Assembly (NCBI GenBank): GCA_051530055.1
Contig: CM121341.1
Location: forward strand, 3,631,761 to 3,695,760
Direction of reading: 5' to 3'
Source of the DNA: Neoechinorhynchus agilis
Taxonomy: Eukaryota; Animalia; Acanthocephala
Length of the DNA stretch: 64,000 nucleotides
Part shown: positions 13,627-59,484 of the stretch, piece after piece
Position numbering within the stretch: the first letter of the stretch is position 1
Layout of the letters: each line of letters begins with the position of its first letter
The notes under the pieces: generated by a model
What the model saw: the letters and a program-made list of their open reading frames with translations, nothing else
Databases searched by the model: none
What the model was told of the DNA's origin: nothing
Program-made: the position numbers and the translations under genes

Positions 13627-14196
13627 CGAAAAGTATTCCCGAATTCTGCTGGCATCGCCGAACGATATGTGACCTATACAATTAACAAATAATAACTTCA
13701 TCGTTTCTATGGCGATTACTTGGAGCGTTCGTAAACTTTTCTTTGAAATCAAAAAAATTATCTTTGGTGATCTCAATTTTTCGTCCGTGTGTTCGGACTT
13801 CTTTTAAGGAAAGTTAAATAGCCGCTTTTTTCGCAGTTCGTTTGTACAACCTTAAAAGTCTGACGAGACGGACGAAAAGGTCTCTATTTTTCTCATAACC
13901 AAAGAACACATAAATGATTGCAGTGTCGCAAGTTGATAATGTTAATTCTCTTCGAGATGGTTCACTAGAAATAAAGTTACAAACATACAAAATATAAACT
14001 TTTAGTGAACATAATTCCCCGGTCATGACCTATTTGATTTATTTGAGATATTTCGAAGGAGGTAACCTCACCTCGTCAGTCATTGCTTGCAACTTTTTTC
14101 AAATAAAAAATTGGCGCATGTTCACAAAAAGTTTATATTGATTAACCCGAAGGATTTTCTCTATCAATGATACAAAATATCCTATAAAAGCGATAA

Positions 14197-23027: not shown

Positions 23028-24035
23028 CTAGGATTTTCCATGGCGTCTCACATGTAGATTCAAATGGTCGCTTCTCGCAAAAGCCTTTTCGCACACATTG
23101 CATCGAAAAGGTTTATCACCCGTATGAGTTCTAAAATGCCTAGTAAGTTCATCTGACCTAGCGAATCTCCATGGACAAGACGGCCATCGACAAGCGTAAG
23201 GTTTTTCCCCGGTATGCGTTCTCATATGAGCTTTCAAGTGAGAGCTTTTTCCGTATTGTTTGGTACAACCTTTACTCGGACACCTATAGTTACCCATCTT
23301 TTTATCCACGACACTTTGTCGTCTCTTCTTTTGAGATTTGTTGGTAACTTGTTTAACCTTCGATCCCGATCGTTTTTTCTTACTTTTTAACGAGCACTCT
23401 AACGTTTGATCGAAATGTATTGGTTCTTGGTGCTCATTAACGTTTCCAATGTAGTTTTGCTCTAACGATAAAATGTTTGTGCTGTTAAAATGATCATGCC
23501 CATTTGTTGAAGGCATCAAAGGTACTGAGTAAATGTATTGATTATTGCTTGATCCATTATATAGTGCAGCAGGATTCCATGCCTGATCAAATGAAGGAAT
23601 AAACACTTGAGACTCGTTATTTATCTTACAGTCTCCTTGAGCGCAAGAGTTGTAATGGAAAAATGAGTTGTAACTCGACTGTTCTTGTTGAGGTAGCAAT
23701 GACGATTGAACGTGACTAACAAACCCATCACTATCAGGAATCAATGGAGATAAATAATTAGCCAATCCAAAGTACTCAAATGTCTCTGATTGGCTTTGGG
23801 GTTCGGTCTGCTGGAAACCGTATCCAGGCGGTGCGTCCACTTTGTTCCGATTATTCACTAGTGGCTGACTGAAACCGCCGTCATTCGACACAATCACGCA
23901 TGAACATTGGTATCGAATGTTTAATGAACACTTGTTGCTATTTTCCGATTTGCAATCAGCTATATATTGATCAATCGGTGAGCTTAAAGATTTTGGAATA
24001 AGTTCGGAGTCCTCGTATGCACTTGTGTTAGCCAT
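23028..24035 (-). CDS. Kruppel-like factor (three C-terminal C2H2 fingers), intronless, 335 aa
   Basis: C-terminus [81 protein letters not shown]. There is no Btd box (CxCPxC) before finger 1, so KLF rather than Sp; the subfamily is not resolved. Confidence 0.97.
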
Positions 24036-27875: not shown

Positions 27876-28142
27876 AAATAAATATTAAAAATTAATCGTG
27901 TATAAATGAATTTGGCTTAATTTTTTTGGAACTCAGCATTCGTTCATAGTAATTATTTTTAGTTGTTTTATGGCAACGAAATTGAAATGATTTTATTTTA
28001 AATCCGACATTTTGGCACAATTTTGTACGCCTTTATCAAGGTAATCTTCAAAGTTACTTTTAGTGTGATTATTTGGAGCGATAGCAAACGAAAACCATAG
28101 CAACGATGGATTTATTATTTTACGAAGTAGAACATTTTGAAG

Positions 28143-28511
28143 ATGATTGACAACCAAAGTATCCGTGAACGAAGGAAAGACTCAATTCTGGTTACAAAAG
28201 AGCTGATTTTTCAGATTGCGGACGAGGTTTTACATGAAAAAACTCAGATATTTGATAAATATATAACTCACGGTTGGATAACCGAAATAATGTCTAGAGT
28301 GTTATTTAAGATAAGGGAATCGCCAGAATCCGATTTGGAGGATACATATTTTATAGTGTGTTCAATTTTTGAACGGAACGTGGAAACTTTGACCAATTAC
28401 GACTTTCGATCCGATTTTATTGGTGATCCCGAAAAGGACGATGTCATTTGTATCAAATACTCGAACGATAGTCTCGTATCTTTTATACTCGTGTATGTTT
28501 TTAAGAAATGA
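28143..28511 (+). CDS. Uncharacterised ORF, ~122 aa
   Basis: A single open frame from ATG 28143 with protein-like composition in AT-rich DNA; no recognisable motif. Confidence 0.5.
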   Translation: MIDNQSIRERRKDSILVTKELIFQIADEVLHEKTQIFDKYITHGWITEIMSRVLFKIRESPESDLEDTYFIVCSIFERNVETLTNYDFRSDFIGDPEKDDVICIKYSNDSLVSFILVYVFKK

Positions 28512-28518
28512 ACAATTT

Positions 28519-29082
28519 TTATGAATCTATGCCCATTTTCCGTTTAAATTCCTTGACTCGTTCCAATCTTTTCTTACTTTTTTTATCCTTTTGCTTCCGG
28601 TTGATTTCGGCTTCTCGTTTAAGTCGAGCACTCAAACTCATCTCTCCGTTCTCCATTTCATCGAGTTTTAACAACATTTTATGCCTAGCCAATTCTCTAT
28701 TCTTTTCTAGAGAACGAGTAGAATGGCATTTGACTATGGCACCCGTCGGAACGTGGCGAAGATGAACGGCGTTATTTGTCTTGTTGACATTTTGTCCGCC
28801 CGGTCCGCTGCCTCGGACAAAACTCTCTTTAATTTCAGCATCGTCCAACTGTTTCGCCCAATCGATCGGAAGTTTAGGGAGTTTTATTGTAGAAGCAGAG
28901 CGGATTTCCGATAACCAAATTATAGTTCTCCAAGCCATCAAATCTGCAACCATAAGATTGGGGTTTTGTTCAAATGTCAATTCGAAGAGTGCCCTAAAAT
29001 CTAGCAGGACGTCGATCAATTTCTGCGCCAAGATTCGATTTAAAAGTGAATTATAATCGCCAATCATTATTATGCGTTCCAT
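28519..29082 (-). CDS. MTRFR: Mitochondrial translation release factor in rescue (C12orf65 family, GGQ)
   Basis: ESFVRGSGPGGQNVNKTNNAVHLRHVPTGAIVKCHSTRSLEKNRELAR followed by a basic C-terminal helix (KQKDKKSKKR). The start codon is ambiguous (29082, 28953 or 28938). Confidence 0.9.
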   Translation of the reverse strand: MERIIMIGDYNSLLNRILAQKLIDVLLDFRALFELTFEQNPNLMVADLMAWRTIIWLSEIRSASTIKLPKLPIDWAKQLDDAEIKESFVRGSGPGGQNVNKTNNAVHLRHVPTGAIVKCHSTRSLEKNRELARHKMLLKLDEMENGEMSLSARLKREAEINRKQKDKKSKKRLERVKEFKRKMGIDS

Positions 29083-29405
29083 TTTCGAGTTATCTGATCT
29101 TATTATCACCACGTTTTAATATTCGAATACCTAATTTTTACATCATTTTTAGCTAAATAAAAAAAATCACATTACGAAAATATTAAACACTTTAAATAAA
29201 GCACAAAAGACGGAGCATTTGCGCGATAAAAATCTTTCACTGGTAGGGTGATAAAACTTTTATTATTGTGTAAAATGACAATGGTCCAACAAGCTCTACA
29301 TGGACACTTGTTCAGAAAAGGTCATTCGCCTTGTTGACCAACGGTGGCTTGAAAAGTTCTTGAAATTTGGCAGAAAAGAACCCGGCAATTGGAAGGCCAT
29401 TGCAA

Positions 29406-31834
29406 CTAACATTTATCCGTTTTCCCATATCTCTGCGTTTCCTTCTTCGACGAATGCGACTTGTCGACGAAACGATTTGCTCCGGCTGACCTTTTTTCGA
29501 ACCAAATGATATCGTAATCGTTATTTGTGGATTTAAGCGTATTACCAATCCCAACCCTGTTCTGTGATCCACAAACAAGTTTAAAATATTTACGGTGATG
29601 ACCACCACCACTTTCCTTGTCTTCGATCACTCTTATCATCTGTTCTCCATGTGATAACTTCATTTTCCTCCGTATTGTAATGTTCAAGTACTGTCTTCGA
29701 TCATGAGAAACCTCACTTTTAACCTCCTCCATATAAGCCCTCAATCGTCGCATTGCTTCACGATTATTGCCAATATTATCTAGCCTATGTGAATCAATAG
29801 CCACGATTTGATCATCGCATTTTATCCGACCGTCTTTGTGAGCAGCACCACCGTAGATTACAGCGTCCACAAATAATCCAAGGTCTTGTCTCAATCCAGA
29901 ATTATCACTCCCGTCATTTTGAAGAGTATCAGAACATTCCAAGGATGCACCTTTTACACTTATCCCAAGACCAGCGGACTTTGTGTCGTTTAGATAAATT
30001 CGGAACCCAAATGTTTCGTATACCTCATCACCTTCGATTTCATGTCCTTGAGCGTCAAGGATCCGAAGAACTTCAAGATCAACATCTTGTCCAAAGTCGC
30101 AACACTCACTTAACCGTGCTGATTGGCGAAGATTATCAGTCGGAGTGAAATTCAATATAATGTCTCCGGGAAGTAGGTGCGACGATTGATTGGTTACTTT
30201 TCCAATAACCGACAAAATCGGGTTCTCAGTGAACGACAAGATCAATCGTTTCATGTCGCTGTTTTGCCATCCAATATTGTCCACATTTTCACTTACTAAT
30301 TGAAACCCGAATCCAATGGAGCGTTCTCGACGAACTCTGGTGGTTATTTTAGCCACCATTGTCCGTGAAGAGCCGGAACGAAGATAATGAACCCGAATAG
30401 GTCTTTCACCATTTTTTCCTTGTTGATCGCATCTATCAACAGCGATTATTACATCGCCCAGTTGAAGAGCAGTTTGACCATTCGGACCGATCATTTCATA
30501 GTTGCAGCCGCTCACTACAAGTACATTCGATTCATTGTTAACTCTAAACAAATCGAATATGGTTTTGTGTGTGTGAAAGCTCATTGTGAGCTTACATTTC
30601 AATAGAAAATGTGTAATGGTTTAAGCAATCCATTCTGTTCATTAATAAAATGCGTTTAGTCGGACTCTCGTAAGCGCCTTTTAGGATCTCCTCACTAGTA
30701 GGCCAAAGAAGTTCTGTTGATAGCAATATGTTTCCATCGGATGAAAATAAATGTGGACTAGGTGTTGATTCCGGTCCGCTGCTTGTGCCAGTGTAATATG
30801 CCTGCAAAATACGAACGAAAAATTATCAAAAAAAGGTTTGGTAAGATTACTAAGCGCTGCTTGGTTGTTCAGCCGCATGTTTTATCTATTGATGATTGTT
30901 TGATTGACAATCCGACTGAAAGAGAGAGATTTTATTGAAACACCTAGCTTTCGCCGTCCAACGATCCCGTGGAACTGTCGATAGCGGAAGCGCTGATCAT
31001 ATCCCGAGAGACCCGGGATCGTGAGGACTCTAGCGGGCATCGGTCGGTCGGTAGGACACTCATTAACCAGAAGGATGAGTTGTCTGCCGTCCACTTCACT
31101 CGCATTGTAGATTACACCCTGAAGAAGCCGTTGGACGGCGAAAGCTAGGTGTTTCAATAAAATCTCTTTCAGTCGGATTGTCAATCAAACAATCATCAAT
31201 AGAAAAAAAGGTTTCATGAATATTATTACTGAGTTAAAAAAGATCCAATATATTTTCTGATTAGAAAACTAAATCTTTCCTTAACTACGGCGACAATTTT
31301 TTGAATGGACATACCGATGAACTAGTTGGTGAATTTGCAATAATAACTTTATCGTTATTATTGGCGATTGGTGTTGATGTCTTGATCAGATCGTATTGGT
31401 CTTCGTCTGATGTTGAAGGCACTTGCCGAGAATATAAGCCGGTCCTGCTATTTTCACCTCTTAACAAACGTAGGGAATTTTGAAGTTGACTGGTGAAGCT
31501 TGACTTTTGTTTTTTATGAGATCCATGCGTTGTGTTCATTGTATTTACCGATACCTCATGATATAAAGCTCGTTTGATTTAGAAGCAAAAAAATGGGGGA
31601 AAAACTCACAACATCGCCATCTTTAAGTATATGTCCAACTTGGTCGCTTAAATCCAATAGGCATCCAAGATGCCTAGCAATCATTTTGTTTGTATCAGGT
31701 TGGCAATAGTCCGTTGAGCTTGTGATTTTCCAATACCTTCTACAAGCGTTCTCAATAACCTGACCAAGACTTTGTTCAGGCTGACAAGGCACAAGTACCT
31801 TATCTCCACTGTAGAAAGTTACAACAACTCGCAT
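29406..31834 (-). CDS. PARD3: Par-3 / Bazooka polarity scaffold (CR1 + three PDZ domains), C-terminally short
   Basis: N-terminal CR1 (MRVVVTFYSGDKVLVPC...ACRRYWK...LLDLSDQVGHILKDGD). A well-conserved PDZ3 (IYLNDTKSAGLGISVKG...DLGLFVDAVIYGGAAHKDGRIKCDDQIVAID...NREAMRRLR) and two more divergent PDZ-like segments upstream. Several short introns. Confidence 0.92.
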
Positions 31835-32994: not shown

Positions 32995-35900
32995 CAAGAT
33001 GAGATTTTATTGCCTCCTATAGATAAAACACCAATTAAATTACGGATCTTATTTTTGCTTGTAATCAAGTACCTTCCAATTTCCCAGAGAAGTCTCTAAT
33101 CAATCATCGTTATAACAGAAACTAGAAAACTTGATCACCAAAACTCGGAACCAACGCTACTTTGAATTGTAAACTAAGATGAGATTTCACTGTCTCTTCA
33201 AGTTAAAACGCTAATTAAATTACGGATATTACTTCTACTTTTGCAATCAAGCGCCCTGCAATTTCCGAGAGGTCTCTAATCAATCATCGTTATAACAGAA
33301 ACTAGAAAACTTGATCACAAAAATTCAAAATGAACGCGACTTTAAATTGTAAACTAAGATGAGTTTTTATTGTCATTGAAGATAAAACAATAATGAAATT
33401 GAGGATCTTACTTTTGTTTTTGAAATCAAGCGTCCTGCAAAGCCCCAAAGGAGTCTCTAATCAATCGTCGTTAATGAACAGAAACAACATAACTTGATCA
33501 CCAAAATTCAAAACCAACGCGACTTTGAATCTTAAACTAAGATGAGATTTCATTGTCTCTTAAAGATAAAACAATAATGAAATTACGGATCTTACTTTTG
33601 TTTTTGCAATCAAGCGTCCTGCAAATCCCCAAAGGAGTCTCTAATCAATCGTCGTTAATGAACAGAAACAACATAACTTGATCACCAAAATTCAAAACAA
33701 GCACTTTGAATCTTAAACTAAGATGAGATTTCATTGTCTCTTAAAGATAAAACAATAATGAAATTACGGATCTTACTTTTGTTTTTGCAATCAAGCGTCC
33801 TGCAAATCCCCAAAGGAGTCTCTAATCAATCGTCGTTAATGAACAGAAACAACAAAACTTGATCACCAAAATTCAATGTCTCTTAAAGATAAAACAATAA
33901 TGAAATTACGGATCTTACTTTTGTTTTTGCAATCAAGCGTCCTGCAAATCCCCAAAGGAGTCTCTAATCAATCGTCGTTAATGAACAGAAACAACAAAAC
34001 TTGATCACCAAAATTCAATGTCTCTTAAAGATAAAACAATAATGAAATTACGGATCTTACTTTTGTTTTTGCAATCAAGCGTCCTGCAAATCCCCAAGAG
34101 TCTCTAATCAATCGTCGTTAATAACAGAAACAACAAAACTTGATCACCAAAATTCAAAACAAGCGACTTTGAATCTTAAACTAAGATGAGATTTCATTGT
34201 CTCTTAAAGATAAAACAATAATGAAATTACGGATCTTACTTTTGTTTTTGCAATCAAGCGTCCTGCAAATCCCCAAAGGAGTCTCTAATCAATCGTCGTT
34301 AATGAACAGAAACAACAAAACTTGATCACCAAAATTCAAAACCAACGCGACTTTGAATCTTAAACTAAGATGAGATTTCATTGTCTCTTAAAGATAAAAC
34401 AATAATGAAATTACGGATCTTACTTTTGTTTTTGCAATCAAGCGTCCTGCAAATCCCCAAAGGAGTCTCTAATCAATCGTCGTTAATGAACAGAAACAAC
34501 ATAACTTGATCACCAAAATTCATTGTCTCTTAAAGATAAAACAATAATGAAATTACGGATCTTACTTTTGTTTTTGCAATCAAGCGTCCTGCAAATCCCC
34601 AAAGGAGTCTCTAATCAATCGTCGTTAATGAACAGAAACAACAAAACTTGATCACCAAAATTCAAAACCAACGCGACTTTGAATCTTAAACTAAGATGAG
34701 ATTTCATTGTCTCTTAAAGATAAAACAATAATGAAATTACGGATCTTACTTTTGTTTTTGCAATCAAGCGTCCTGCAAATCCCCAAAGGAGTCTCTAATC
34801 AATCGTCGTTAATGAACAGAAACAACATAACTTGATACCAAAATTCATTGTCTCTTAAAGATAAAACAATAATGAAATTACGGATCTTACTTTTGTTTTT
34901 GCAATCAAGCGTCCTGCAAATCCCCAAAGGAGTCTCTAATCAATCGTCGTTAATGAACAGAAACAACATAACTTGATCACCAAAATTCAAAACCAACGCG
35001 ACTTTGAATCTTAAACTAAGATGAGATTTCATTGTCTCTTAAAGATAAAACAATAATGAAATTACGGATCTTACTTTTGTTTTTGCAATCAAGCGTCCTG
35101 CAAATCCCCAAAGGAGTCTCTAATCAATCGTCGTTAATGAACAGAAACAACATAACTTGATCACCAAAATTAAAACCAAAGCGACTTTGAATCTTAAACT
35201 AAGATGAGATTTCATTGTCTCTTAAAGATAAAACAATAATGAAATTACGGATCTTACTTTTGTTTTTGCAATCAAGCGTCCTGCAAATCCCCAAAGGAGT
35301 CTCTAATCAATCGTCGTTAATGAACAGAAACAACAAAACTTGATCACCAAAATTCAATGTCTCTTAAAGATAAAACAATAATGAAATTACGGATCTTACT
35401 TTTGTTTTTGCAATCAAGCGTCCTGCAAATCCCCAAAGGAGTCTCTAATCAATCGTCGTTAATGAACAGAAACAACATAACTTGATCACCAAAATTCAAT
35501 GTCTCTTAAAGATAAAACAATAATGAAATTACGGATCTTACTTTTGTTTTTGCAATCAAGCGTCCTGCAAATCCCCAAAGGAGTCTCTAATCAATCGTCG
35601 TTAATGAACAGAAACAACATAACTTGATCACCAAAATTCAATGTCTCTTAAAGATAAAACAATAATGAAATTACGGATCTTACTTTTGTTTTTGCAATCA
35701 AGCGTCCTGCAAATCCCCAAAGGAGTCTCTAATCAATCGTCGTTAATGAACAGAAACAACAAAACTTGATCACCAAAATTCAATGTCTCTTAAAGATAAA
35801 ACAATAATGAAATTACGGATCTTACTTTTGTTTTTGCAATCAAGCGTCCTGCAAATCCCCAAAGGAGTCTCTAATCAATCGTCGTTAATGAACAGAAACA

Positions 35901-36198
35901 ACATAACTTGATCACCAAAATTCAATGTCTCTTAAAGATAAAACAATAATGAAATTACGGATCTTACTTTTGTTTTTGCAATCAAGCGTCCTGCAAATCC
36001 CCAAAGGAGTCTCTAATCAATCGTCGTTAATGAACAGAAACAACATAACTTGATCACCAAAATTCAATGTCTCTTAAAGATAAAACAATAATGAAATTAC
36101 GGATCTTACTTTTATTTTTGCAATCAAGCGTCCTGCAAATCCCCAAAGGAGTCTCTAATCAATCATCGTTAATGAACAGAAACAACAAAACTGGATCA
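32995..36198. repeat. Satellite C: ~20 copies, long (184 bp) and short (142 bp) unit variants
   Basis: TGATCACCAAAATTCA recurs with a 184-bp period (33495 to 33679) and a 142-bp period (35341, 35483, 35625). The first two or three copies at the left edge are clearly diverged. Confidence 0.98.
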
Positions 36199-36505: not shown

Positions 36506-39500
36506 ATGCCAACCGATGAAGATTCAATGGGTCAAACTAAGCCGATATCTCTATCTGGATTTACGGTTGCATTAAGGTCAAAATTTATGAAATCACTAAG
36601 ACAAAGCGGTCACATTTTGCCATTTAAACAACTCTATAGATTTGCTCCAACGAACGCAATGATACTCTCATGGATTGGTGTTATTGTGGCTGTTCTAAAT
36701 TCAACATTGATGCCATTTATGTTCATTGTGTTTGGCGATACAACTGATCTTTTTATAAACAAGAATATATGCGGTGTGCTTAACATTTACGAGATCTATG
36801 ATATTTGTCCAGCCGAAGTAAACGACCTCAACTTTCATTTGCTTTATCATAAATGCAATTTGTCTCTTCCAGGAGCGGAGATCCCAAAAATTGATTTAGT
36901 AAAGAGATCCTCGTTTAAACTTATACACTTCACGTTGATCGGATTGGGCACTTTCATTTTCTCTGCCATTCAAAATATTTCGTTTTCTTATGCTGGAGAA
37001 TTAATTGTTCGTGAGTTACGTAAACGGCTTTTCCGATCAATATTATCACAATCTGTTCATTGGTGTCAATCGCATGATGTAAACACTTATCTCACTGATA
37101 ATGTCAATCGGTTCAAAGATGGAATCAGCGATCGGATCGGGTTTGTTGTTCAAGCGTTGGGCACGCTGATAACTGTAATCGTCTTTAGTCTTTTTAAAAA
37201 TTGGACTTATGCATTAGCCGTGATCGCAGGATCACCGTTGCTCGTCTTTGCGTCCATCTTAACCACTATTGTTACACTGAGAAATAAAAATGATGATTTA
37301 CACTTGGAAGCTGAAGATATAGCAGGACAGACGATCCGAAATATTCGAACTGTTCAAGCTTTCGATGGACAACGAAGAGTTATTAAACAATATCAAAGTC
37401 ATTTGAATCAGATAAAGTTCGCAGGTATCAGGAAGGCAACTTTAAATGCACTAATGTCATCGATTCTTTGGTTCGCTATATTCGTAACGTACGCTCTTGG
37501 ATTCTGGTACGGTGGACGACTTGAAATCGACGGCAAAATATCCATTGGTGCTATTCTTACAGTGTTTCTAGGGATCCAAGCGGCCATCTATCGAGTCGGT
37601 AATGCATTTTATCATCTAGTATCGATCAATCAAGCTCGAGCAGCGGGATATATCCTCTATCAACTTATAACGAATATTTGCTATTTTTCTCAATATCTTA
37701 TAGAATCCCCCCAAAAAAAAATTTAAAGCAGATTTCGTAATGTTTTAAAAGTTACGAACCGGTTTCAGAGATCTAGAAACAATCCATCAGTGTTTTTTAT
37801 TGGGTGTCCTTTTAATAGCAAATATTCCCATAGACGCCAATCATGACGGAAATACGGAACCGGATGAAATTACAATGAAAACTGATTCAGGTCATTTGCA
37901 CAAAAAAGATATTGTGTTCAAAAGCGTTTCATTTTCATATCCTAATCGTCCTGATGTCAAAGTTCTCGAAGATTTCAGTTTAATGATACCCGGTGGAAAA
38001 ACAACTGCTTTGGTAGGAACAAGTGGATCCGGTCGATCTGCACTTGTACATTTATTGCTTCGGAATCATCAAGCGCAATCAGGGGCGATTTTAGTTGGTG
38101 GCATAGATATTGGAAAGTTTGAAGTTCGATCATATCAGAGTCGAATCGGACTATTAACCCATGATCCATCTTTGTTTTCAGTGTCAATTGCATCCAATGT
38201 CCGATTTGGAAAGAAAAATGCAACAGATGGAGAGATCAGGACGGTTTGTAAAATCGCAAATGCTGAAGAGTTTATAAGACAACTTCCTTCACAATACAAA
38301 ACGCAAATTAATCAATCGAGATTGAATGATGAACAGAAACAAAAGGTTGCAATAGCTAGAGTTTTGATCAGCGATCCCCAAATTCTAATAGTAGATAAAG
38401 TAACAAGTGGACTTGATAGCCAAAATGCGAATAGAGTTCATGAGATTCTGCGTAATGTCAGTAGAGGTCGCACCACCATAATTATTGCTTGCCGATTGAG
38501 CCAAATCCGGAATGCTGATTTCATTGTTCATATGCATAAAGGTCGAATTGTCGAGTTAGGTACTGATCGGGAGCTGATGGAACGAAATGGCATATACAGC
38601 CTATTGGTAAAGATGGAATCTAAACAAACTGATGAAGATTTTGATTGGGAAGCTAAACAGATGAGAGCGAAAAAAAATCCTATTAGAAGCATATCTGATC
38701 ATGCTAGTACATTTGAGAATAAAGATTTTGACGAAAGAGATGTTACAGTGTTCATGTTCAGAATGAACAAACCTGAGTTCATTTTCGTGTTTATCGGTTG
38801 CCTATCTTGTGCTGGATTTGGTCTGATGCAAACATTGTTTGAGATTTACTTTGCTAAAACCGTCGTAGGGTTTGCAATTTGCTGGGATGATTCACGCATC
38901 GAATCGATCAATGGATTTTGTTTAATCTTCGTTGTATTTTCTATTATATCCCTTGTTGTCCAAGTTGTGTCCGGTTATTGCTTTGGAGTATCCGGCGAAA
39001 ATTTGACAAAACGTCTTCGTACCAACATTTTCGAATTGCTACTGAGACAAGATATCGCGTTTTTTGATCGACCAAATAATTCAGTTGAACGTTTATGTAC
39101 AATGTTATCATCTACAGCATCCTTAGTGCACGGATCAACTGGAATTCGACTTGGTGTTATTGTATCCGATTTGTGTATACTCACAACTGGAACAATATTG
39201 GCACTGGTGTACTCATGGAGATTGACACTCGTGTTTGCTGCTTTCGTTCCGTTTCTAACACTCGCAACATTTTTAAGCATGAAATTCAAAAATCAATTCG
39301 ATGTTAACGACAAAAATCGCCTTAAAAAAGCCCATGTTTTGATCGATGAAGCATTGCCTAATATTGTGAAAGTTAAACAATTAAACATTGAACAGAACTT
39401 TATCGATGAATACGATGCGATTATAGAAGATGCGTTCAGTAAAACTGTAAAAAAATGTATAATCATAGGATTATTGTTTGGAATTTCCCAATCAATTGTA

Positions 39501-40475
39501 TTTTTCACTATTGGAACGGGATTCTTTGCATCGGCTCATTTTGTTGAGCGACAAAAAATGGATATTCAAGAAATGATGATTGTATTTGCCGGACTGTTAT
39601 TCGCATCAATGGCATTGGGACAGAATCAGGTCACGGCACCAACGAACACTAAATCTCGGGAAGCTGCAGTCGCGATCTATGAATTTTTGAAGAGCCAACC
39701 CGAACTAGACAGTATGACTGACGAAGGGATTATACCGAAGACGTTCAATGGGCATTACAGTTTCAGTAACGTAAACTTTCATCATCCTTTATTGGACAAT
39801 CTTCAAGTTCTAAAGAATATCTCCGCCAGTTTCGAGGGCGATTCGAAAATTGCTATAATTGGTCGCCTAGAGAGTGGTACAAGTATGATTTTAAAGCTGA
39901 TGGAGCGCTTTTATGCCCCTACATCAGGTGAAATCTTCGTTGATGGAATAAATATAAAAGATATAAATATTCGATGGTATCGGAGACAACTTGGGTTAGT
40001 GGAAAGCTATCCGGTTTTGTTTAATTGGTCGATAGGTGAGAATATAAAGTTTGGAGACACGAGCAGGGATAAGATACCTACCGAAGAAATCCGTAAAATA
40101 GCAGCTTTAGTTAATATTGACGATTTTATCAGTGGCCTCCCAGATGGATATGACACTCAAGTGGGTTGCAATGAAGTTCAATTGACACCTAATCAAAAAC
40201 AATTGATTTGTATTGCTAGAGCACTGATCCGAAGACCGAAATTTTTGTTAATAGATGACACAATGTTGGACCAAGAATGTGAGCAGAGAATCTTGACTCA
40301 CATGGCAGAAACTCAAAATGGAGTCATAATCGCTGCGAGTGCAGTTGAGGCACACACAAATTACAATCATATTTTTGTTATAAGTCACGGTGAAGTGGTT
40401 GAAAGTGGAAACCACTCTTCGTTGTTAAAAAAAGACGGTCTATACGCTCAATTGAGCATTTTATCCAAAAAATAA
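36506..40475 (+). CDS. Full-length ABCB (MDR/P-glycoprotein-like) protein, TMD-NBD-TMD-NBD, with degenerate nucleotide-binding motifs
   Basis: The N-terminal part (FKQLYRFA...MILSWIGVIVAVLNSTLMPFMFIVFGD...IRTVQAFDGQ...YALGFWYGGRL) is followed by the 891-aa ORF with FSYPNRPDVKVL, GENLTKRLR, LLRQDIAFFD and a second NBD. One interruption lies at ~37680-37818. Confidence 0.93.
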
Positions 40476-40482
40476 AAAGCGA

Positions 40483-43400
40483 TTATGAATAAAATGCTTG
40501 GTACGGATCACAATTAACACAATCAACCATGTCATTCGCAGATCCAGATTCAAAGTTGTCGTGAGTTCTCTCAAGGATTGCTAGAATTCTTTAAAATCAA
40601 TGAGTACGTTACTCAATTTTTAAACCATCTTTTACTTACTGTTTGAGAACTTCGTCGTTTCGGTACACCGTTTCATCGATTTGTCTTTGCTTCTTCTTCA
40701 AATCTGTAATTCTGGATTCGATAAAGGGTTAAATGGGATCTTTCTTGAAATTTTAAGATTCATAAAAAGGGAGATCATCTAAACTTCGAAAAGTTGTCAC
40801 AGTTTAAAACTAGAAACCATTATGCATTTGTATTTTTAGGTCATTGTTTCCTATACAATTACAAACTTTCATTTTTGGGTAATCAATTACGTTATTAAAA
40901 ATTGCAACAACTAACAAACCGAATACAAATTTCCCAAGCACGTATCGATCAATTCGATCTAAATAAGATGCTCATAAAGTTTTTAACACTAGTTTTTGAT
41001 TCTAATTGGTCATTTCGCATCGCTTTAGAGTACAACAAAAGCCCACTACAGTACAATTCTTAGAATAGGATAAGAATTTTGCTCAGTATTGTATATTATA
41101 ACCGTTACGTACGGACATTTTAAAAAATTGATTGGCTTGAGTAGATTTCGTTTTGAGACATAGCGACGAATCTTGGTCGTTGGCGTTCAATCGACCGGCT
41201 ACACAAAATCCGATGCACTCACTTAAAAGCTAATTAAGTTATAATTAAATACAGAGATAATTAAAATTTTACTTACAGACTTTGAGATTTGCCGTAGTTC
41301 TTGCAAATTGATTTCAGGTGAATTGCTCATCTTTTCCATAAACTCATTGAACACTGAGCGGTGTTCAAAAAAGTTCTGAACGCAATTGCTTATAGTCAAA
41401 ATAAGATGCTTAAAAGTCAAAAAAGTTTAAACATCAATTACTTACCACATCCATATTTCCCATTCTTTGTGTATACTTAAAAGTTTGGGGTATAATTCTG
41501 TCATTACAATATCAACCATTTTTTGTCTTAATGATCTCAGATGAATCCTTCGATTCATATGAGCCACTGTTTTCTCAGAGTTAAAATGTTGCTGTTTGGT
41601 TTCCAATTCAAATTGGTCCAAAAGAATAAGTCCGTTGTCGATTAAAGATTTCATACGCTCGTTTCTAAAATAATTTCTTGCCTTCATGCATGCCAAATGC
41701 TTTATGAGAATTTCGCTAAAAAAACCCCGCAAATTGCCGTGATTTTTTATCCCTGTAATAATTATAATCCCACCAATTACTGGAAAATAGGAAGACAAAG
41801 TGCGACCCAATAATTATTTTGTTTTAAACTTATAGACAACCTCGGATAATGGAAACCGTGATAATTGCAAGAGTTTGTTGATACCGAGAAAGCCTCATGC
41901 ATGGTTCTTACCTTTTATTACGATCAGCAATTAAAATCGCTGAATGCTTGATTTTACTAAATCCCTCCATTTTAGCAACTGCCAAATCGCATTGTGAAAA
42001 GTGAGAATAAATCTTGTAAATAACAAGCTGTGTTTTTTTAAAATAATATGAAACTCACTTCATCGTATTGAGATCTAAGTTCATTTAGATCATCGATCAG
42101 AGTTATACCATGCAATGTGTCGGTTTCGATGGAGCTTGTGATTGATTGAATATCAGAGTCAATATCATAAAGTTGTTGTTTTATCAAACTTAGTTGTTTT
42201 TGAGAAGTGTTCAATTCAGTTTGTATGTGAAGGCTGATTTGGTCACAGTTAAGATTTAATTAAACGAAGAATTTAAAAACTCACTTGATCGTCAAAGCAG
42301 TTGATTTTATAGAATCAGGAATAATCTGCATTCTATCAGCAACCTTTAAAATATGATACATACTGCCAATTGTTTCTCGTGCCCATAAGTAAGCATCTCT
42401 GACATTATTGTTCCGCTTCATTGGATGAACTTCGACTATTTCAAAAAGATTTGGTGTAACTGTTATAAAAAATCGAGTACTTACAGATTATTGGTTTCAC
42501 AATATAACTCTGTTCACGGCTTAAGGAACAAAGAACAAATTGGGAAGTTAAATCTGTGGTTGATTGAAGCACTTGGGTCATTTTTGAAGTTAAAATTTCG
42601 TTAGAAACGAGAAGTATTTGATCAATGCATGTTTTGCTGACACTCGAAACTTCCTCAAATAATTTGCAGACTCTTTAGAAATTATAGACAGAGAAATAGA
42701 GAAATTTTGTGGTATACTGACGTTGATTTCGGTGCCAATAAAACTTGCTCCTCTTGAAAAGTATTTGAATTGAAAACGTTTGAGATTGTGAATTGGGAAA
42801 TTGTGTGAGCTTCTGAAAAATACGCTTCAACCGGGAACAACCCCGTGACATGAGCGTCTAGAAGGCTTCCCAATAATGGCTCCAGTTTGTTTTTAAGCAT
42901 TCTAATTAAAATTTAAATGCGAAAAAGAAGAGAAAACGAACGCAGAGTATCCGCATGTCTTGGGAAATTTTTCGAAATAATCAATTGGACCGTTTTCCTG
43001 CCGTTGAACACCACTTAAGCAACCTGTTGGTTTTTCTTTTATTATTTTTAACCTAAACAGCTAAATCAAAAATGTTAATCCTTTTAAAAGGCGAATTACA
43101 TAGTCGGATAATCTTTTCGAACTCCAGCAAATGGTCTGAATGGTATCTGCCCTGTCGCTGCCTGATACAAAGTCACTCCAATTGTCCACAATTCACTTTC
43201 AGTTTTGAAGATCGGAGGACTCTCACGGGACAACCAATATTCAAACATGGGTGGCGGCTTTATAACGTTTAGATTAATTCAATTAACAATTTACAGACTC
43301 ACCAAATATTCTGCAGTTCCAACCAAGGATTGAAAGCCTTCCTCGTAGTCATAAAATAACTGCTTTGCGGCACCAAAATCGGCAAGTTTATATATTTTTC

Positions 43401-44662
43401 TAAAGAAATTTCACCAATAGATTTCTATCCATAAGCATACGATCCGTCTTGTCCTAATTGAACCATAATGTTGCTTGGTTTGATATCTCGATGAATAATG
43501 TTTTGACTTCTTAAATATTTCATCCCTTCGGCTATGTTCTCATGGAATTTGTGAGAAAAGGGTATGAAACTCGTACCCAAGTCTGAAAATAGATCCATAA
43601 AATCAGATTGACAAAGACCGTAGCAGTTTTGAGGTTGTTCAAGCAAGGTTTGTAAGCTTCCTATTGAGCAAAATTCCATTACGAGTATTCGTTGAGTATC
43701 ATGATACCGTGATGAGTGCTTATTCGAGAAATTATTGTCACAGTGCACAATAGAGGAAACTTACCAAAATATCTACTCCAAGAAGCTTTATTACATTTGG
43801 ATGCGATAAACCCTGCATCGTAGCCAATTCTTTAAAACTTGATTCCAGCTGATCGCCTTTATATGTTCGTTTGCTCAACGGATGAAAAACCTTGGCGGCA
43901 ACTGTTTCACCGTCGCACTATTCTCAGCAGAATCGATAATTGAAATTAAAAATTTAAAGATAGAACGAACTATTCGATGTGCCCGAAACACGTCTGCTGT
44001 AGATCCGGCACCGATGAGGTCACTGATTGACCAAAAGTACTGACTCGTCTTTTCCTAGATCCAGTGGAAATTATAGCTCTTCAAAAAAAGGGTGAAATTA
44101 TACACAAAAGCAAAAAAATTCCTAATAAGAAAAGATTATGGACGATATTGTCCCCGTAAATTTTCAGAATGACCCTTTTCGATCGGATTCTCTTAGTCTC
44201 CGATATAAAATGGTTTAAAAATGGACTAATATCAATCCGTAGATTTCCCTGATCAATAAAATTGGTTAAATACACTTTAAAACAGTCTTTAAAATTGCTA
44301 AGAAAGTTATGGATATTAAGACCTTGACTGAGAATTTGAGTAAGCTTCTCACAAATACTGTGTTAGATTGGTTTAAAGCATTGGAAAAAATACAAATCAA
44401 AATCCGTAAATAGTATATTAAAGCCCAAATCTCTTCTTTGTTTAATTTGATGTTTAACAACACGTTTTCTTCGAAATTAATTTGATCCGTGGATGTGAAC
44501 GTCGAATAGTTCATTAAATGGATCGGCGACCTAAATCTTTCTACGATCTTTTCTAAGGTCTCATTTGGTCGAATAAATATCAAAAAAAAACACTTATCAA
44601 TCAAACTGTAGTTGAGTATGGCACAACGGTAGATCATCATCAGTCAATATAGTCTTTACCAT
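40483..44662 (-). CDS. TBK1: TBK1/IKKepsilon-family Ser/Thr kinase (multi-exon)
   Basis: The spliced kinase domain reads QYFWSISDLIGAGSTADVFRAHR / GETVAAKVF...HPNVIKLLG / ILVMEFCSIGSLQTLLEQPQNCYGL...F / AEGMKYLRSQNIIHRDIKPSNIM / IYKLADFGAAKQL...SLVGTAEYL. Later exons resemble the TBK1 scaffold and coiled-coil regions. The start (ATG|GTAAAG at 44662) and stop (40483-40485) are inferred from splicing. TBK1 versus IKBKE is not resolved. Confidence 0.9.
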
Positions 44663-45155: not shown

Positions 45156-48100
45156 TCAAACAATTGCTTTATCCATTCCATTAGTAGCGCCGTTCCTAAT
45201 AGAAGAAGAAGCACAGTGAATATTGCCATTGAGAGAGTAGTTTGACGAAGTCGAGTGAACAGACGATTGCTTTTGTTGATCCTTTGGTCTTTTTAGTTGA
45301 ACTTTTAGACGTTTCATCCCGATTTGGAAACCGTTCATGCCTTGTATGGCTGCTTGTGCCGACACAGGGTTGTCGAAACTTACGAATCCTATTTATATTG
45401 GATGATTGAAATCAAAAGAATGTCTTCAAATTAAAAAAACACCTACCGAAACATTTACTTTGATTTGTAGCACGGTCCACATAGACCTTGGCACTCAACA
45501 CAGTACCAAAACTCACGAACATGTGAGCAAGGTCAATGTCGCCGAACTCTTGCGGTAAATGGTAAATAAACAAGTTGCATCCTTCAGGACCAACAAACAA
45601 TACTTCTTTTGAGCTCGTTATTGTATTTATCATTCCATTTGATTGAGGAATGGGTTGTTGATGAAACAATGGATGTGTTGTGACTTGTGGACCAGTTGGA
45701 TAAGCCGCTGCTGCCATTGAGTTAGTCAGTGAGGATGTAGGAAAGACTGGTGTTGCCGCCGAGGGAGGTGTTGATTCGTTCGAAGAATTCCCATTCGATT
45801 GTGTTTGTTGTGACTGCTGATAGTTCAAATGGGAAGGTACCGATGATACGACAGGCATTCCGTTAGTGTGTTGTGGAAACATTGCAAAATTAAGAGGTAT
45901 CAACGTAGTAGCACCAGCACAATTTGTAGCGGTGGCATAAAATATTGAGTCTTAGTATCGATAAGGTATTTTTCTTTTAAGACTCAATACTGTACAACGT
46001 TGGCTGGTTGGTTGTTGATCCTGCTGGCACGTATTGTGGTTGTGGTGGTGCCGCAGCAGCGTTAACGGCACCACCATATCCCTGATGTTGTTGACTCGCA
46101 GCGACAGCAGCCGCGGCGGCATAAGCGTTAAATACTTGATTGAACAGGTACTGTTGGTTCATATAGGCCGCTGCCGCCGCCGCAGGGTTTGGGGTCAACG
46201 ATGATAGACCAGTTCCAGTTCCATAATGAGTCTGAGTAACAATTGGCACTGGAATGGCACCAAAATGTCCACCAGCCGTAGCCGCCGCAGCAGCCGCGGC
46301 TGCAGTTGCAGCATTGTATTGTTGTTGCATTTTCCTTATTTGCCGTTCTCGTTCGTTGTCTGCAAATTTAACAACAATGCTGGACGAAGCTCCCTGTTTT
46401 GAACACAAGTTAGAGAGAAAGTCTTATGTGAAGGGAGCAAAATAGCAGTCTGATGTGCACACAAACACGAGGAATGTCATTCGGGAAGGGTGGAAAAGAG
46501 CACGCGTGAGCGAAAATGATAAATTATACAATAAAGGAGAGATCTTAATCGATGTAACAGATTACGAACATTGAACGTTTCCAAATGGCGGCGTGGAATG
46601 GCGCCCAACGGTGCCTATTTTGTCTAGTGGTGGTGGTGGGTGCCACTTATGAAAAACTTGTGAACGAATCTTGAGTATCAATATCGGGGAAATTGATTCT
46701 TCTTTTGATTAGAAAAACGCAGTTTATACAAACATTTTGACCATCTAACCGATTATGAACATTGAACGTTTCCAAATGGCGGCGTGGAATGGCGCCCAAC
46801 GGTGCCAATTTTGTCTAGTGGTGGTGGGTGCCATTTATGAAAAACTAGTGAACGAATCTTGAGTATCAATATCGGGGAAATTGATTCTTCTTTTGATTAG
46901 AAAAACGCAATTTATACAAACATTTTGACCATCTAACCGATTATGAACATTGAACGTTTCCAAATGGCGGCGTGGAATGGCGCCCAACGGTGCCAATTTT
47001 GTCTAGTGGTGGTGGGTGCCATTTATGAAAAACTAGTGAACGAATCTTGGTAATATCGGGGAAATTGATTCTTCTTTTGATTAGAAAACGCAATTTATAC
47101 AAACATTTTGACAATCTAACCGATTATGAACATTGAACGTTTCCAAATGGCGGCGTGGAGTGGCGCCCAACGGTGCCAATTTTGTATAGTGGTGGTTGGT
47201 GCCACTTATGAAAAACTAGTGAACGAATCTTGAGTATCAATATCGGGGAAATTGATTCTTCTTTTGATTAGAAAAACGCAATTTATACAAACATTTTGAC
47301 CATCTAACCGATTATGAACATTGAACGTTTCCAAATGGCGGCGTGGAGTGGCGCCCAACGGTGCCTATTTTGTCTAGTGGTGGTTGGTGCCACTTATGAA
47401 AAACTAGTGAACGAATCTTGAGTATCAATATCGGGGAAATTGATTCTTCTTTTGATTAGAAAAACGCAATTTATACAAACATTTTAAGAATCTAACCGAT
47501 TATGAACATTGAACGTTTCCAAATGGCGGCGTGGAGTGGCGCCCAACGGTGCCTATTTTGTCTAGTGGTGGTGGGTGCCATTTATGAAAAACTAGTGAAC
47601 GAATCTTGAGTATCAATATCGGGGAAATTGATTCTTCTTTTGATTAGAAAACGCAATTTATACAAACATTTTGACCATCTAACCGATTATGAACATTGAA
47701 CGTTTCCAAATGGCGGCGTGGAGTGGCGCCCAACGGTGCCTATTTTGTATAGTGGTGGTTGGTGCCATTTATGAAAAACTAGTGAACGAATCTTGAGTAT
47801 CAATATCGGGGAAATTGATTCTTCTTTTGATTAGAAAAACGCAATTTATACAAACATTTTGACCATCTAACCGATTATGAACATTGAACGTTTCCAAATG
47901 GCGGCGTGGAGTGGCGCCCAACGGTGCCAATTTTGTCAGTGGTGGTGGGTGCCATTTATGAAAAACTAGTGAACGAATCTTGAGTATCAATATCGGGAAA
48001 TTGATTCTTCTTTTGATTAGAAAACGCAATTTATACAAACATTTTGACAATCTAACCGATTATGAACATTGAACGTTTCCAAATGGCGGCGTGGAGTGGC

Positions 48101-59400: not shown

Positions 59401-59484
59401 TATTAAATATTCAAAAAATTCAATAAACATTTCAGAGTTACGTCTTCGGTATCTCTCAAAGCTTAAGCTGGACTTCCTTTCTTA

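What the first reader, a model, noticed from the sequence alone, without database searches (positions are those of the whole stretch)
37900..40475. Intact P-glycoprotein-like ABCB whose two ATPase sites are both degenerate
Seen: NBD1 has Walker A GTSGSGRS (K to R), Q-loop LTHDP, signature LNDEQKQ (instead of LSGGQKQ), Walker B ILIVDK (catalytic Glu to Lys) and H-loop IACRL (His lost). NBD2 has Walker A GRLESGTS (Lys lost), signature LTPNQKQ, Walker B LLIDD (Glu to Asp) and no H-loop His. The ~1280-codon frame is nonetheless open, with well-preserved transmembrane domains. Known: ABCB exporters normally keep two competent sites, and asymmetric ABC proteins (ABCB11, ABCC, CFTR, SUR) keep one. 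Inference: this is a pseudo-ATPase retained for another role, such as a passive channel, facilitator, sensor or regulatory subunit.
Basis: partly seen in the sequence, partly recalled or inferred. Interest (0 to 1): 0.75.

Follow-up and report, generated by a model that had tools for sequence, protein, structure and literature searches.

The report
P-glycoprotein copy with two dead ATP sites
A thorny-headed worm (Neoechinorhynchus agilis) carries an old duplicate of its multidrug-pump gene in which every catalytic motif of both ATP sites has been replaced while the rest stayed protein-like, suggesting a pump fold kept for a job that does not burn ATP, although a 148-base insert in the gene leaves it unproven that a full protein is still made.

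Summary
The motif readings are correct. In both NBDs the Walker A lysine, Q-loop Gln, LSGGQ signature, catalytic Glu and H-loop His are all replaced. None of 247 other full-length relatives lacks both Walker A lysines. The gene is KAL7674470.1 of Neoechinorhynchus agilis (Acanthocephala). It is an old, lineage-specific duplicate of a fully canonical ABCB1 on another chromosome.

It is not one open frame. Two ORFs (36506-37726 and 37800-40475) lie in different frames. They are separated by a 148-nt TA-flanked element with a 14-nt terminal inverted repeat and no GT donor in register. Exact removal restores a 1273-aa protein. The database model instead deletes 24 conserved residues.

The evidence argues against long neutral decay:
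- Synonymous sites are saturated, yet codon-position identity is 0.59/0.72/0.36.
- All five unique deletions are in frame.
- There are no stops, where neutral drift to the same motif loss predicts about 10 in the NBDs alone.
- The TMDs keep 82-91% of the paralogue's Pfam score and the NBDs about 60%.

Best reading (about 0.55): a selectively retained pseudo-ATPase of the P-gp fold. Main rival (about 0.3): a pseudogene, possibly killed by the insert. Expression, splicing and orthologues could not be tested.

The parts
36506..37676 (+). Exon 1: ATG at 36506, N-terminus and TMD1 (ABC_membrane), through ...ARAAGYILYQLITN. The 3' boundary is ambiguous within 37670-37678 because of the repeated AATATT.
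   Evidence: ORF list and sequence; Pfam PF00664 at 150 bits; homology to the paralogue and ABCB1 up to YQLI
37677..37824 (+). 148-nt intervening piece: a 146-nt element (37677-37822) plus one copy of a TA duplication (TA at 37675-76 and 37823-24). Its 14-nt perfect terminal inverted repeat is GAATATTTGCTATT (37672-37685) / AATAGCAAATATTC (37814-37827). It carries the in-frame stop TAA at 37724-26. AG at 37817-18 is a possible acceptor, but there is no GT donor in register (CGAATA at 37671).
   Evidence: blastn self-hit and TIR scan; junction test z 6.4, p<=0.003; RNA fold closes the ends, z -3.0; absent from the paralogue and from the P. laevis orthologue
37825..40475 (+). Exon 2: IPIDA..., NBD1 (37908-38624), linker, TMD2 (38742-39698), NBD2 (39756-40472), stop TAA at 40473-40475
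38016..38039 (+). NBD1 Walker A GTSGSGRS (Lys->Arg)
38151..38168 (+). NBD1 Q-loop LLTHDP (Gln->His, Glu->Asp)
38322..38342 (+). NBD1 signature LNDEQKQ (LSGGQ lost; preceded by a 2-aa deletion in the X-loop region)
38382..38399 (+). NBD1 Walker B ILIVDK (catalytic Glu->Lys)
38481..38498 (+). NBD1 H-loop IIACRL (His->Cys)
39774..39794 (+). NBD2 A-loop NFHHPLL (aromatic Tyr->His; Arg of YPxRP lost)
39861..39884 (+). NBD2 Walker A GRLESGTS (second Gly->Glu, Lys->Thr)
39996..40013 (+). NBD2 Q-loop LVESYP (Gln->Ser)
40182..40202 (+). NBD2 signature LTPNQKQ (LSGGQ lost)
40245..40274 (+). NBD2 Walker B / D-loop LLIDDTMLDQ (catalytic Glu->Asp; 2-aa deletion in the D-loop)
40326..40346 (+). NBD2 H-loop region IIAASAV (His lost; 2-aa deletion just upstream)
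40471..40493 (+). Two AATAAA polyadenylation-signal hexamers, one overlapping the stop codon (40471-76) and one at 40488-93

Best explanation
This is an old duplicate of the worm's P-glycoprotein (ABCB1-type) gene. The duplication is specific to the Neoechinorhynchus side of the Acanthocephala. The copy has become a pseudo-ATPase: it keeps the complete TMD1-NBD1-TMD2-NBD2 architecture and fold but cannot hydrolyse ATP at either site.

Shown:
- All catalytic motifs are lost in both NBDs.
- The reading frame and fold have been under long-term purifying selection, stronger on the membrane domains than on the NBDs.
- A canonical paralogue remains to do the pumping.

Inferred mechanism:
- The NBDs now serve as a structural or regulatory cytoplasmic module. 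Site 1 (NBD1 P-loop GxxGxGRS, A-loop Tyr and Walker B Asp retained) may at most still bind nucleotide without turnover. Site 2 (P-loop Glu and Thr, acidic LNDEQ signature) should not bind it.
- The conserved P-gp cavity is used without ATP turnover: equilibrative passage, or binding and sensing of amphipathic ligands, or modulation of a partner protein.
- For the protein to be made, the 148-nt TA-flanked inverted-repeat element must be removed from the transcript. That step is inferred by analogy with the canonical paralogue, which carries its own such element. It is not shown.
For: Motifs:
- Searches give the replacements.
- 0 of 247 other full-length relatives lack both Walker A lysines.

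Origin:
- The protein is 100% identical over the query to KAL7674470.1 of N. agilis.
- The paralogue on CM121342.1 is fully canonical.
- The NJ tree gives (target, paralogue) 100% bootstrap, sister to P. laevis KAI0989395.1 plus a Logan transcript.

Selection:
- dS is saturated, dN is 0.45, and identity by codon position is 0.59/0.72/0.36.
- Invariant columns retained: 78-82% in the TMDs and 62-67% in the NBDs.
- Neutral simulation to the same loss of invariant residues predicts 4.1 stops in NBD1 and 6.1 in NBD2. P(no stop) is 0.02 and 0.005, and 0.027 and 0.048 for the TMDs.
- All 5 target-unique in-domain deletions are in frame, against 0 in the paralogue.
- The relative-rate test shows acceleration concentrated in the NBDs.

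Fold:
- Pfam bits, target vs paralogue: NBDs 74.8 and 69.3 vs 125.7 and 112.1; TMDs 150.9 and 152.8 vs 183.0 and 167.5.
- AF2 mean pLDDT is 79.9 with both NBDs mostly 80-90. Foldseek TM to ABCB1 reaches 0.83.

Other:
- A polyA signal sits at the stop codon.
- The genome is compact (46 Mb, 31.6% coding), so long dead ORFs are not expected to linger (PMC12690905).
- The canonical paralogue has an analogous TIR element breaking its exon. This argues that such elements are tolerated, meaning removed.
Against: - The coding sequence is interrupted by a 148-nt element with an in-frame stop and no GT/GC/AT-AC donor in the register that preserves the protein.
- The element is absent from the paralogue and from the P. 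laevis orthologue, so it is a later insertion. It could be the lesion that killed the gene.
- Its inverted repeats are perfect, which would fit a recent insertion.
- No transcript or peptide evidence was found.
- No orthologue with the same degenerate motifs was found in any other species, so retention across speciation is unproven.
- The selection tests average over the whole branch and cannot exclude inactivation in the recent past.
- No direct evidence exists for any particular non-ATPase function.
Confidence: 0.55

Rival explanations
1. It is a pseudogene. After duplication the copy lost its pumping function and is now non-functional. The 148-nt MITE-like insertion truncates the product after TMD1, and the open frames are what remains of a gene inactivated fairly recently.
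For: - A frame break with stop TAA at 37724-26 and no canonical donor in register.
- The element is a lineage-specific insertion into an ancestrally continuous exon.
- The perfect 14-nt TIR suggests a young insertion.
- All catalytic motifs are gone.
- The overall rate is 2-2.4 times faster than the paralogue's.
- No orthologue and no transcript were found.
Against: - There are no other lesions in 1273 codons despite loss of one third of the invariant NBD residues. Neutral expectation is about 10 stops in the NBDs, with a joint P of about 1e-4.
- All five deletions are in frame.
- The codon-position pattern is typical of coding constraint although dS is saturated.
- The TMDs are nearly as conserved as in the canonical paralogue.
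- The canonical, clearly constrained paralogue also carries a TIR element in its coding exon, so such an element is not by itself proof of death.
- The genome is compact.
Confidence: 0.3
2. It is still an ATP-driven exporter that hydrolyses ATP slowly with non-canonical residues. For example, site 1 would use the Arg P-loop, Walker B Asp and A-loop Tyr of NBD1.
For: - NBD1 keeps the GxxGxG-[R]-S glycine pattern, the A-loop Tyr (SYP), the Walker B Asp and the D-loop SGLD.
- NBD folds are predicted with confidence.
Against: - Site 1 also lacks the catalytic Glu (Lys instead), the Q-loop Gln, the H-loop His and the partner signature (LTPNQ).
- No known ABC exporter works without one consensus site (searches found none).
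Confidence: 0.06
3. The locus makes two separate products. One is a TMD1-only protein from ORF1 (406 aa). The other is an NBD1-TMD2-NBD2 protein from an internal start (Met at 37875, 866 aa), which might associate like half-transporters.
For: - Both ORFs are long and open.
- An ATG lies 50 nt into exon 2.
Against: - There is no independent promoter evidence.
- Eukaryotic mRNAs are not normally bicistronic.
- The frame relation, in which removing exactly 148 nt restores a homology-perfect junction, points to one product.
- Exact look-ups of both products in public assemblies found nothing.
Confidence: 0.04
4. It is an assembly or sequencing artefact that creates false substitutions or a false insert.
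For: The assembly is a hybrid of ONT and Illumina reads from a pool of about 50 worms. The insert contains a C6A9 homopolymer run.
Against: - The degenerations are dozens of independent substitutions and in-frame codon deletions, not homopolymer errors.
- The insert has a structured 14-nt TIR with a TA duplication.
- The assembly was Illumina-supported with 96% k-mer completeness.
Confidence: 0.02

Closest known systems
ABCB1 / P-glycoprotein (MDR1) and its canonical N. agilis paralogue (ACOME3_005842 plus the adjoining model, CM121342.1)
   Same: - Same TMD1-NBD1-TMD2-NBD2 order and the same fold. The best PDB hits are mouse and human ABCB1 (E 6e-216, Foldseek TM up to 0.83).
- It is sister to the paralogue with 100% bootstrap and shares the lineage-specific linker motif EDFDWEAKQ.
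- Both genes are almost intronless.
   Different: Both ATP sites lack the Walker A Lys, Q-loop Gln, LSGGQ, catalytic Glu and H-loop His. There are five in-frame deletions, three of them in the NBDs. The NBDs evolved 2.5-3 times faster.
Asymmetric type I ABC exporters with one degenerate site (ABCB11/BSEP, TAP1/2, ABCC1, CFTR, SUR1/2, TM287/288, TmrAB)
   Same: Loss of the catalytic Glu, H-loop His and signature residues in a nucleotide-binding site whose NBD fold is nevertheless retained. In those proteins the degenerate site takes on a structural or regulatory role (review PMC7756269).
   Different: All of those keep one consensus, hydrolysing site and keep both Walker A lysines. Here neither site is competent, and NBD2 has also lost the P-loop itself.
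SUR (ABCC8/9) and CFTR (ABCC7): ABC folds re-used as regulator and as channel
   Same: They are precedents for an ABC exporter fold serving a function other than pumping.
   Different: They belong to a different subfamily (ABCC), and both still bind and hydrolyse ATP at site 2 to drive gating or regulation. No channel-type or Kir-binding features were looked for or seen here.
Introner / MITE-derived introns (Huff et al. 2016, PMC5684705; non-canonical introns of appendicularian tunicates, PMC13326754)
   Same: The intervening piece is a short element with terminal inverted repeats and a short duplication (TA), inserted in a formerly continuous exon. Exact removal restores the frame.
   Different: No GT-AG pair lies in register. 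No further copies were seen in the 86 kb of this genome that I hold. Splicing is not demonstrated.

Membership tests
ABCB full transporter (P-glycoprotein/MDR type, type I exporter fold) | Domain order TMD1-NBD1-TMD2-NBD2 encoded at one locus on one strand | tested here: met
   Pfam ABC_membrane, ABC_tran, ABC_membrane and ABC_tran lie in that order over 36506-40475. The alignment to ABCB1 is end to end.
ABCB full transporter (P-glycoprotein/MDR type, type I exporter fold) | Single uninterrupted or canonically spliceable coding sequence | tested here: inconclusive
   A 148-nt insert carries a stop. Exact excision is in frame but non-canonical. The other in-frame options each lose or add residues: GT 37599 to AG 37818 (the database model) loses 24 aa; U12-like ATATCCTC 37650 to AG 37833 loses 12 aa; GC 37680 to AG 37818 adds 3 aa.
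ABCB full transporter (P-glycoprotein/MDR type, type I exporter fold) | Two PF00664 membrane domains and two PF00005 NBDs above Pfam gathering scores | tested here: met
   Scores are 150.9 and 152.8 bits (cut-off 28) and 74.8 and 69.3 bits (cut-off 25).
ABCB full transporter (P-glycoprotein/MDR type, type I exporter fold) | Phylogenetic placement inside the ABCB1/4/5/11 clade | tested here: met
   Top PDB and database hits are ABCB1/ABCB4. The NJ tree places it with the acanthocephalan ABCB1 genes at 100% bootstrap.
ABCB full transporter (P-glycoprotein/MDR type, type I exporter fold) | At least one consensus ATP-hydrolysis site (Walker A Lys, Walker B Asp-Glu, Q-loop Gln, H-loop His and the partner LSGGQ) | tested here: not met
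   All of these are replaced in both NBDs. It is therefore a homologue of the family but not a catalytic member.
Asymmetric ABC exporters with one degenerate site | One degenerate and one consensus nucleotide-binding site | tested here: not met
   Both composite sites are degenerate. 246 of 247 relatives keep two Walker A lysines and the other keeps one.
Duplicated (non-processed) pseudogene | Frame-disrupting lesions (stops, frameshifts) | tested here: inconclusive
   There is one lesion, the 148-nt element, and no others in 1273 codons. The canonical paralogue carries a comparable element.
Duplicated (non-processed) pseudogene | Neutral substitution pattern since inactivation | tested here: not met
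   Codon-position identity is 0.59/0.72/0.36 with saturated dS. Stops are absent against about 10 expected in the NBDs. Indels are in frame only. The test averages over the whole branch.
Duplicated (non-processed) pseudogene | No expression | not testable with these tools
   No N. agilis transcript data can be reached.
Tc1/mariner-type MITE (for the 148-nt piece) | Terminal inverted repeats | tested here: met
   A 14-nt perfect TIR lies at 37672-37685 / 37814-37827.
Tc1/mariner-type MITE (for the 148-nt piece) | TA target-site duplication | tested here: met
   TA at 37675-76 and 37823-24 flank a 146-nt element, and element plus one TA equals the 148 nt whose removal restores the frame. The palindromic site AATATT makes other registers equally possible.
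Tc1/mariner-type MITE (for the 148-nt piece) | Multiple related copies in the genome | not testable with these tools
   There are no copies in the 64-kb window or the 22.6-kb L001. The rest of the genome is not searchable here.
Spliceosomal intron (for the 148-nt piece) | GT-AG, GC-AG or AT-AC termini in the register that keeps the conserved protein | tested here: not met
   The seven registers of exact excision give AA-CA, AT-AA, TA-AA, AT-AT, TT-TA, TT-AT and TG-TT. With AG 37817-18 the donor is CG.

The most novel reading that the evidence does not exclude
A full-length P-glycoprotein-fold protein that has no functional ATP site at all has been kept by selection and works without ATP hydrolysis, for instance as an equilibrative conduit, ligand sensor or regulatory partner in a gutless parasite that feeds through its tegument. 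Its mRNA would be made by removing an exonic TA-flanked inverted-repeat element that lacks GT-AG ends.
Probability: 0.3. Interest if true: 0.85.

Novelty: new variant of a known kind. Interest (0 to 1): 0.6.

Why it matters
The textbook view, and the 2020 review of degenerate sites (PMC7756269), is that type I ABC exporters need at least one hydrolysing site. Asymmetric members such as CFTR, SUR, BSEP and TAP always keep one. A selectively retained ABCB with both sites dead would be a natural experiment on what the P-gp membrane cavity and NBD dimer can do without an ATP cycle. It would also add ABC transporters to the list of families with true pseudoenzymes.

For parasitology, it would mean that counting 'P-glycoprotein genes' in helminth genomes overstates drug-efflux capacity.

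The side observation may matter as much. Both ABCB paralogues of this 46-Mb genome carry lineage-specific, inverted-repeat-bounded inserts in formerly continuous exons, and the annotation pipeline mis-modelled both. If these are spliced, the species gains introns from transposon-like elements with non-canonical ends. That could also help explain its low BUSCO scores.

Tried and rejected
1. Transcript evidence.
- A 147-aa query across the predicted junction returned nothing, not even the window's own protein, so that search is uninformative. An earlier, longer version timed out.
- Exact look-ups of ORF1 (406 aa) and ORF2 from its first ATG (866 aa) found no contig.
- The one supplement of PMC12690905 held as text had no ABC entries.

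2. Orthologues with the same degeneracy.
- The full search of 1.84 billion representatives gave nothing above 41% identity except the paralogue.
- A 327-aa NBD1-plus-linker query gave only bacterial and other ABCB NBDs at 46% or less. It again missed the self protein, so it was insensitive.

3. dN/dS per domain against the paralogue. dS is saturated (NG86 undefined or 3.5; YN00 fails), so only codon-position identities and simulations could be used.

4. A U12-type intron. ATATCCTC at 37650 is in register with AG 37833, but it would delete 12 conserved residues, the branch-site match is imperfect, and AT-AC is out of frame. I kept it only as an option.

5. The idea that every intron here has hairpin ends. 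Of 44 ORF junctions only 3 reach p<=0.003, so it holds for a subset only.

6. The 329-nt element at 30880-31208 as an intron of the PDZ gene. No removal joins long ORFs.

7. Copies of the 148-nt or 363-nt elements elsewhere in the held DNA. None were found.

8. Literature on doubly degenerate ABC transporters. Three full-text searches and the specialist review mention none. A paper on acanthocephalan drug targets does not mention ABC transporters.
Full report
WHAT IS THERE.

The window is eukaryotic DNA. The region holds two long plus-strand ORFs: 36506-37726 (406 aa) and 37800-40475 (891 aa). Pfam finds ABC_membrane in the first, and ABC_tran, ABC_membrane and ABC_tran in the second. The best solved-structure relatives are mouse and human ABCB1 (E 6e-216).

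The protein collection holds a protein that is 100% identical over the query: KAL7674470.1, 'hypothetical protein ACOME3_000749' of Neoechinorhynchus agilis (Acanthocephala). It lies on the 19.4-Mb chromosome CM121341.1. The genome is 46.2 Mb with three chromosomes and 31.6% coding sequence. It was annotated with BRAKER and RNA-seq (PMC12690905).

THE OBSERVATION.

- NBD1 has GTSGSGRS, LLTHDP, LNDEQKQ, ILIVDK and IIACRL.
- NBD2 has GRLESGTS, LVESYP, LTPNQKQ, LLIDDT and IIAASAV.
- In addition, the A-loop Tyr of NBD2 is His. There are 2-aa deletions in the X-loop region of NBD1, in the D-loop of NBD2 and just before the H-loop of NBD2.

Both composite sites therefore lack the Walker A lysine, the Q-loop glutamine, the partner LSGGQ, the catalytic glutamate and the switch histidine.

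This is exceptional. In a census of 247 other full-length relatives drawn from two database searches, 246 have two G..G.GK[ST] motifs and one has one. Only this protein scores zero in all five motif classes. A specialist review of degenerate sites and three full-text searches mention no exporter with both sites degenerate.

THE FRAME IS NOT CONTINUOUS.

ORF1 ends at TAA 37724-26, and ORF2 is in the +1 frame. Homology to the paralogue and to ABCB1 shows that coding stops after ...GYILYQLIT(N) and resumes at (N)IPIDANHDG. Removing 148 nt gives a 1273-aa protein with one terminal stop.

The removed piece has these features:
- A perfect 14-nt terminal inverted repeat: GAATATTTGCTATT at 37672-85 and AATAGCAAATATTC at 37814-27. 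The junction test gives z 6.4 against shuffles.
- It can be written as TA + 146-nt element + TA, which is the signature of a Tc1/mariner-type MITE.
- RNA folding closes its ends with a stem (z -3.0).
- There is no GT between 37650 and 37737. None of the seven equivalent registers gives GT-AG, GC-AG or AT-AC. With the AG at 37817-18 the donor is CGAATA.

The database model uses GT 37599 to AG 37818 instead. That deletes 24 residues (GNAFYHLVSINQARAAGYILYQLI and the following T) which are about as conserved as the rest of the gene.

THE PARALOGUE AND THE ORIGIN OF THE GENE.

A second N. agilis gene on CM121342.1 is annotated as two models of 872 and 399 aa. It is 43-53% identical per domain and has fully canonical motifs in both NBDs.

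It is continuous where the target is interrupted. It carries its own 363-nt interruption in TMD2:
- It is TA-flanked.
- It has an imperfect TIR, GTTAGTAGTTTTGTG...CACAAAATCACTAAC.
- It has a GT donor, but its 3' end is AA.
- Its fold z-score is -3.5.

The Pomphorhynchus laevis orthologue (KAI0989395.1) encodes residues 37-1276 in one exon. Both N. agilis elements are therefore later insertions into an ancestrally continuous exon.

An NJ tree (1036 ungapped columns, 200 bootstraps) groups target and paralogue at 100%. Their sister is P. laevis plus a Logan transcript, followed by the rotifers. The duplication is therefore specific to the N. agilis side. No orthologue of the degenerate copy exists in 1.84 billion representative proteins.

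IS IT DECAYING OR CONSTRAINED?

- Against the paralogue, synonymous sites are saturated (third-position identity 0.36), whereas first and second positions are 0.59 and 0.72 identical. dN is 0.45. This is an old duplication with the signature of coding constraint.
- The target evolved faster: 234 unique changes against 99, p = 1e-13. The excess is concentrated in the NBDs. With rotifer or frog outgroups the TMDs are not significantly accelerated.
- Of the columns invariant in nine other sequences, the target keeps 78% and 82% in the TMDs and 67% and 62% in the NBDs. The paralogue changes only 6/99 and 11/92 NBD positions.
- Pfam scores tell the same story. The TMDs retain 82-91% of the paralogue's score and the NBDs about 60%.
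- I simulated neutral drift from the paralogue's coding sequence until the same fraction of invariant residues was lost. This predicts 4.1 stops in NBD1 and 6.1 in NBD2, with P(none) of 0.02 and 0.005. For the TMDs it predicts 4.3 and 3.4 stops, with P(none) of 0.027 and 0.048. None is observed.
- The target has five unique deletions inside conserved domains, all in frame. The paralogue has none.
- AlphaFold2 on exon 2 gives a mean pLDDT of 79.9 with ordinary NBD secondary structure. Foldseek gives a TM-score of up to 0.83 to ABCB1.
- AATAAA hexamers overlap and follow the stop codon.

Together these results reject 'dN/dS near 1 over the whole history'. They show that the catalytic residues were lost while the reading frame and fold were still under selection. 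They cannot exclude recent inactivation.

IS THE INSERT FATAL?

Three GT-AG introns elsewhere in the window also have 12-nt perfect complementarity between the 5' part of the intron and the region of the 3' splice site:
- 7416-7748 and 9063-9411 in the neighbouring gene.
- 45990-45951 on the minus strand, in an RRM gene.

In two of these three (7416-7748 and 45990-45951) the AG lies inside the right arm and most of that arm (8-10 nt) is exonic, as does AG 37817-18 in the target; in 9063-9411 the right arm is almost entirely intronic and reaches only 1 nt into exon 2. Only 3 of 44 ORF junctions show such pairing, so it is a subset of introns.

I read the evidence this way:
- The canonical, clearly constrained paralogue is also broken by a TIR element.
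- In both genes exact removal restores a homology-perfect frame.
- The 883 codons downstream of the target's insert show no decay.

This makes removal from the transcript more likely than not (my estimate is 0.6-0.65). It is not demonstrated.

MECHANISM.

Shown: neither site can hydrolyse ATP by any known ABC mechanism.

Inferred:
- Site 1 keeps the P-loop glycines with Arg, the A-loop Tyr and the Walker B Asp. It might still bind nucleotide.
- Site 2 has Glu and Thr in the P-loop and faces an acidic LNDEQ signature. It should not bind nucleotide.
- The better-conserved membrane domains are probably the functional part, and the NBDs a structural or regulatory clamp.

I therefore favour a retained pseudo-ATPase that uses the P-gp cavity without an ATP cycle, for equilibrative passage, ligand binding or sensing, or partner regulation (confidence 0.55 for 'retained, non-hydrolysing protein'). 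The particular role is open. The main rival is a pseudogene (0.3). Residual pumping, two separate products and artefact are minor rivals.

COMPARISON AND NOVELTY.

By descent and fold it is an ABCB1-type full transporter. It fails the family's catalytic criterion. It also fails the definition of the asymmetric exporters (BSEP, TAP, ABCC, CFTR, SUR), which keep one consensus site. I class it as a new variant of a known kind.

LIMITS.

No transcripts, orthologues or population data were available. Two of the three word-indexed searches behaved insensitively.

Noticed in passing
window 37672-37827; L001 12612-12976 (paralogue on CM121342.1); L004 8733-12452 (P. laevis): Both N. agilis ABCB paralogues carry a different short TA-flanked element with terminal inverted repeats (148 nt and 363 nt removed) inside exons that are continuous in the other paralogue and in P. 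laevis. Exact removal restores the frame in both, and neither has a GT-AG pair in register. They are either exonic MITE insertions or transposon-derived non-canonical introns.
   Followed up: partly
window 7416-7748, 9063-9411 (+); 45990-45951 (-): Three in-frame GT-AG introns have 12-nt perfect complementarity between the intron's 5' part and the 3' splice-site region: CAAGAGTTCTCT/AGAGAACTCTTG, GCTAGAAGTATA/TATACTTCTAGC and TATTGAGTCTTA/TAAGACTCAATA. The last intron is only 40 nt long. Only a subset of junctions shows this (3 of 44 at p<=0.003).
   Followed up: partly
window 37599-37818; L001 10001-12619 and 12983-14182: The public gene models are wrong at these elements. The target model (KAL7674470.1, 1249 aa) skips 24 conserved residues. 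The canonical paralogue is split into two genes of 872 and 399 aa. L001 also shows Vac14 split into three models. This kind of mis-modelling could contribute to the low BUSCO scores (47% metazoan) reported for the genome.
   Followed up: partly
L004 3001-12543 (P. laevis WNNJ02000378.1); window 36506-40475; L001 10001-14182: Acanthocephalan ABCB1 genes are almost intronless. P. laevis has a 26-aa first exon, a 5.6-kb intron and then one exon of about 1240 codons. The N. agilis copies have no ancestral introns at all.
   Followed up: partly
window 32996-36198: A 3.2-kb tandem array of 142/183-nt units (88-99% matches) ends about 300 nt upstream of the ABCB start codon. That leaves very little unique 5' flank for a promoter.
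   Followed up: no
window 1-6694; 14186-15071; 46555-49136; 49957-51077; 59484-64000: Five more tandem-repeat arrays have periods of 179, 268, 188, about 120 and 149/109 nt. They occupy roughly a quarter of the window in a genome described as compact.
   Followed up: no
window 30880-31208; 13991-14139; 11251-11529: There are further short inverted-repeat elements: 329 nt with 46-nt arms at 98%, lying inside the PDZ gene model but not joining ORFs; 149 nt with 22-nt arms at 95%; and a nested pair at 11251-11529.
   Followed up: partly
window 23028-24035(-), 28137-28511(+), 28519-29112(-), 29406-30602(-), 43425-43748(-), 45412-45903(-): The neighbouring genes, identified by Pfam, are a C2H2 zinc finger, Tctex-1, an RF-1 release-factor domain, PDZ, a protein kinase and RRM. 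None is another ABC gene, so the degenerate copy is not in a tandem cluster.
   Followed up: yes
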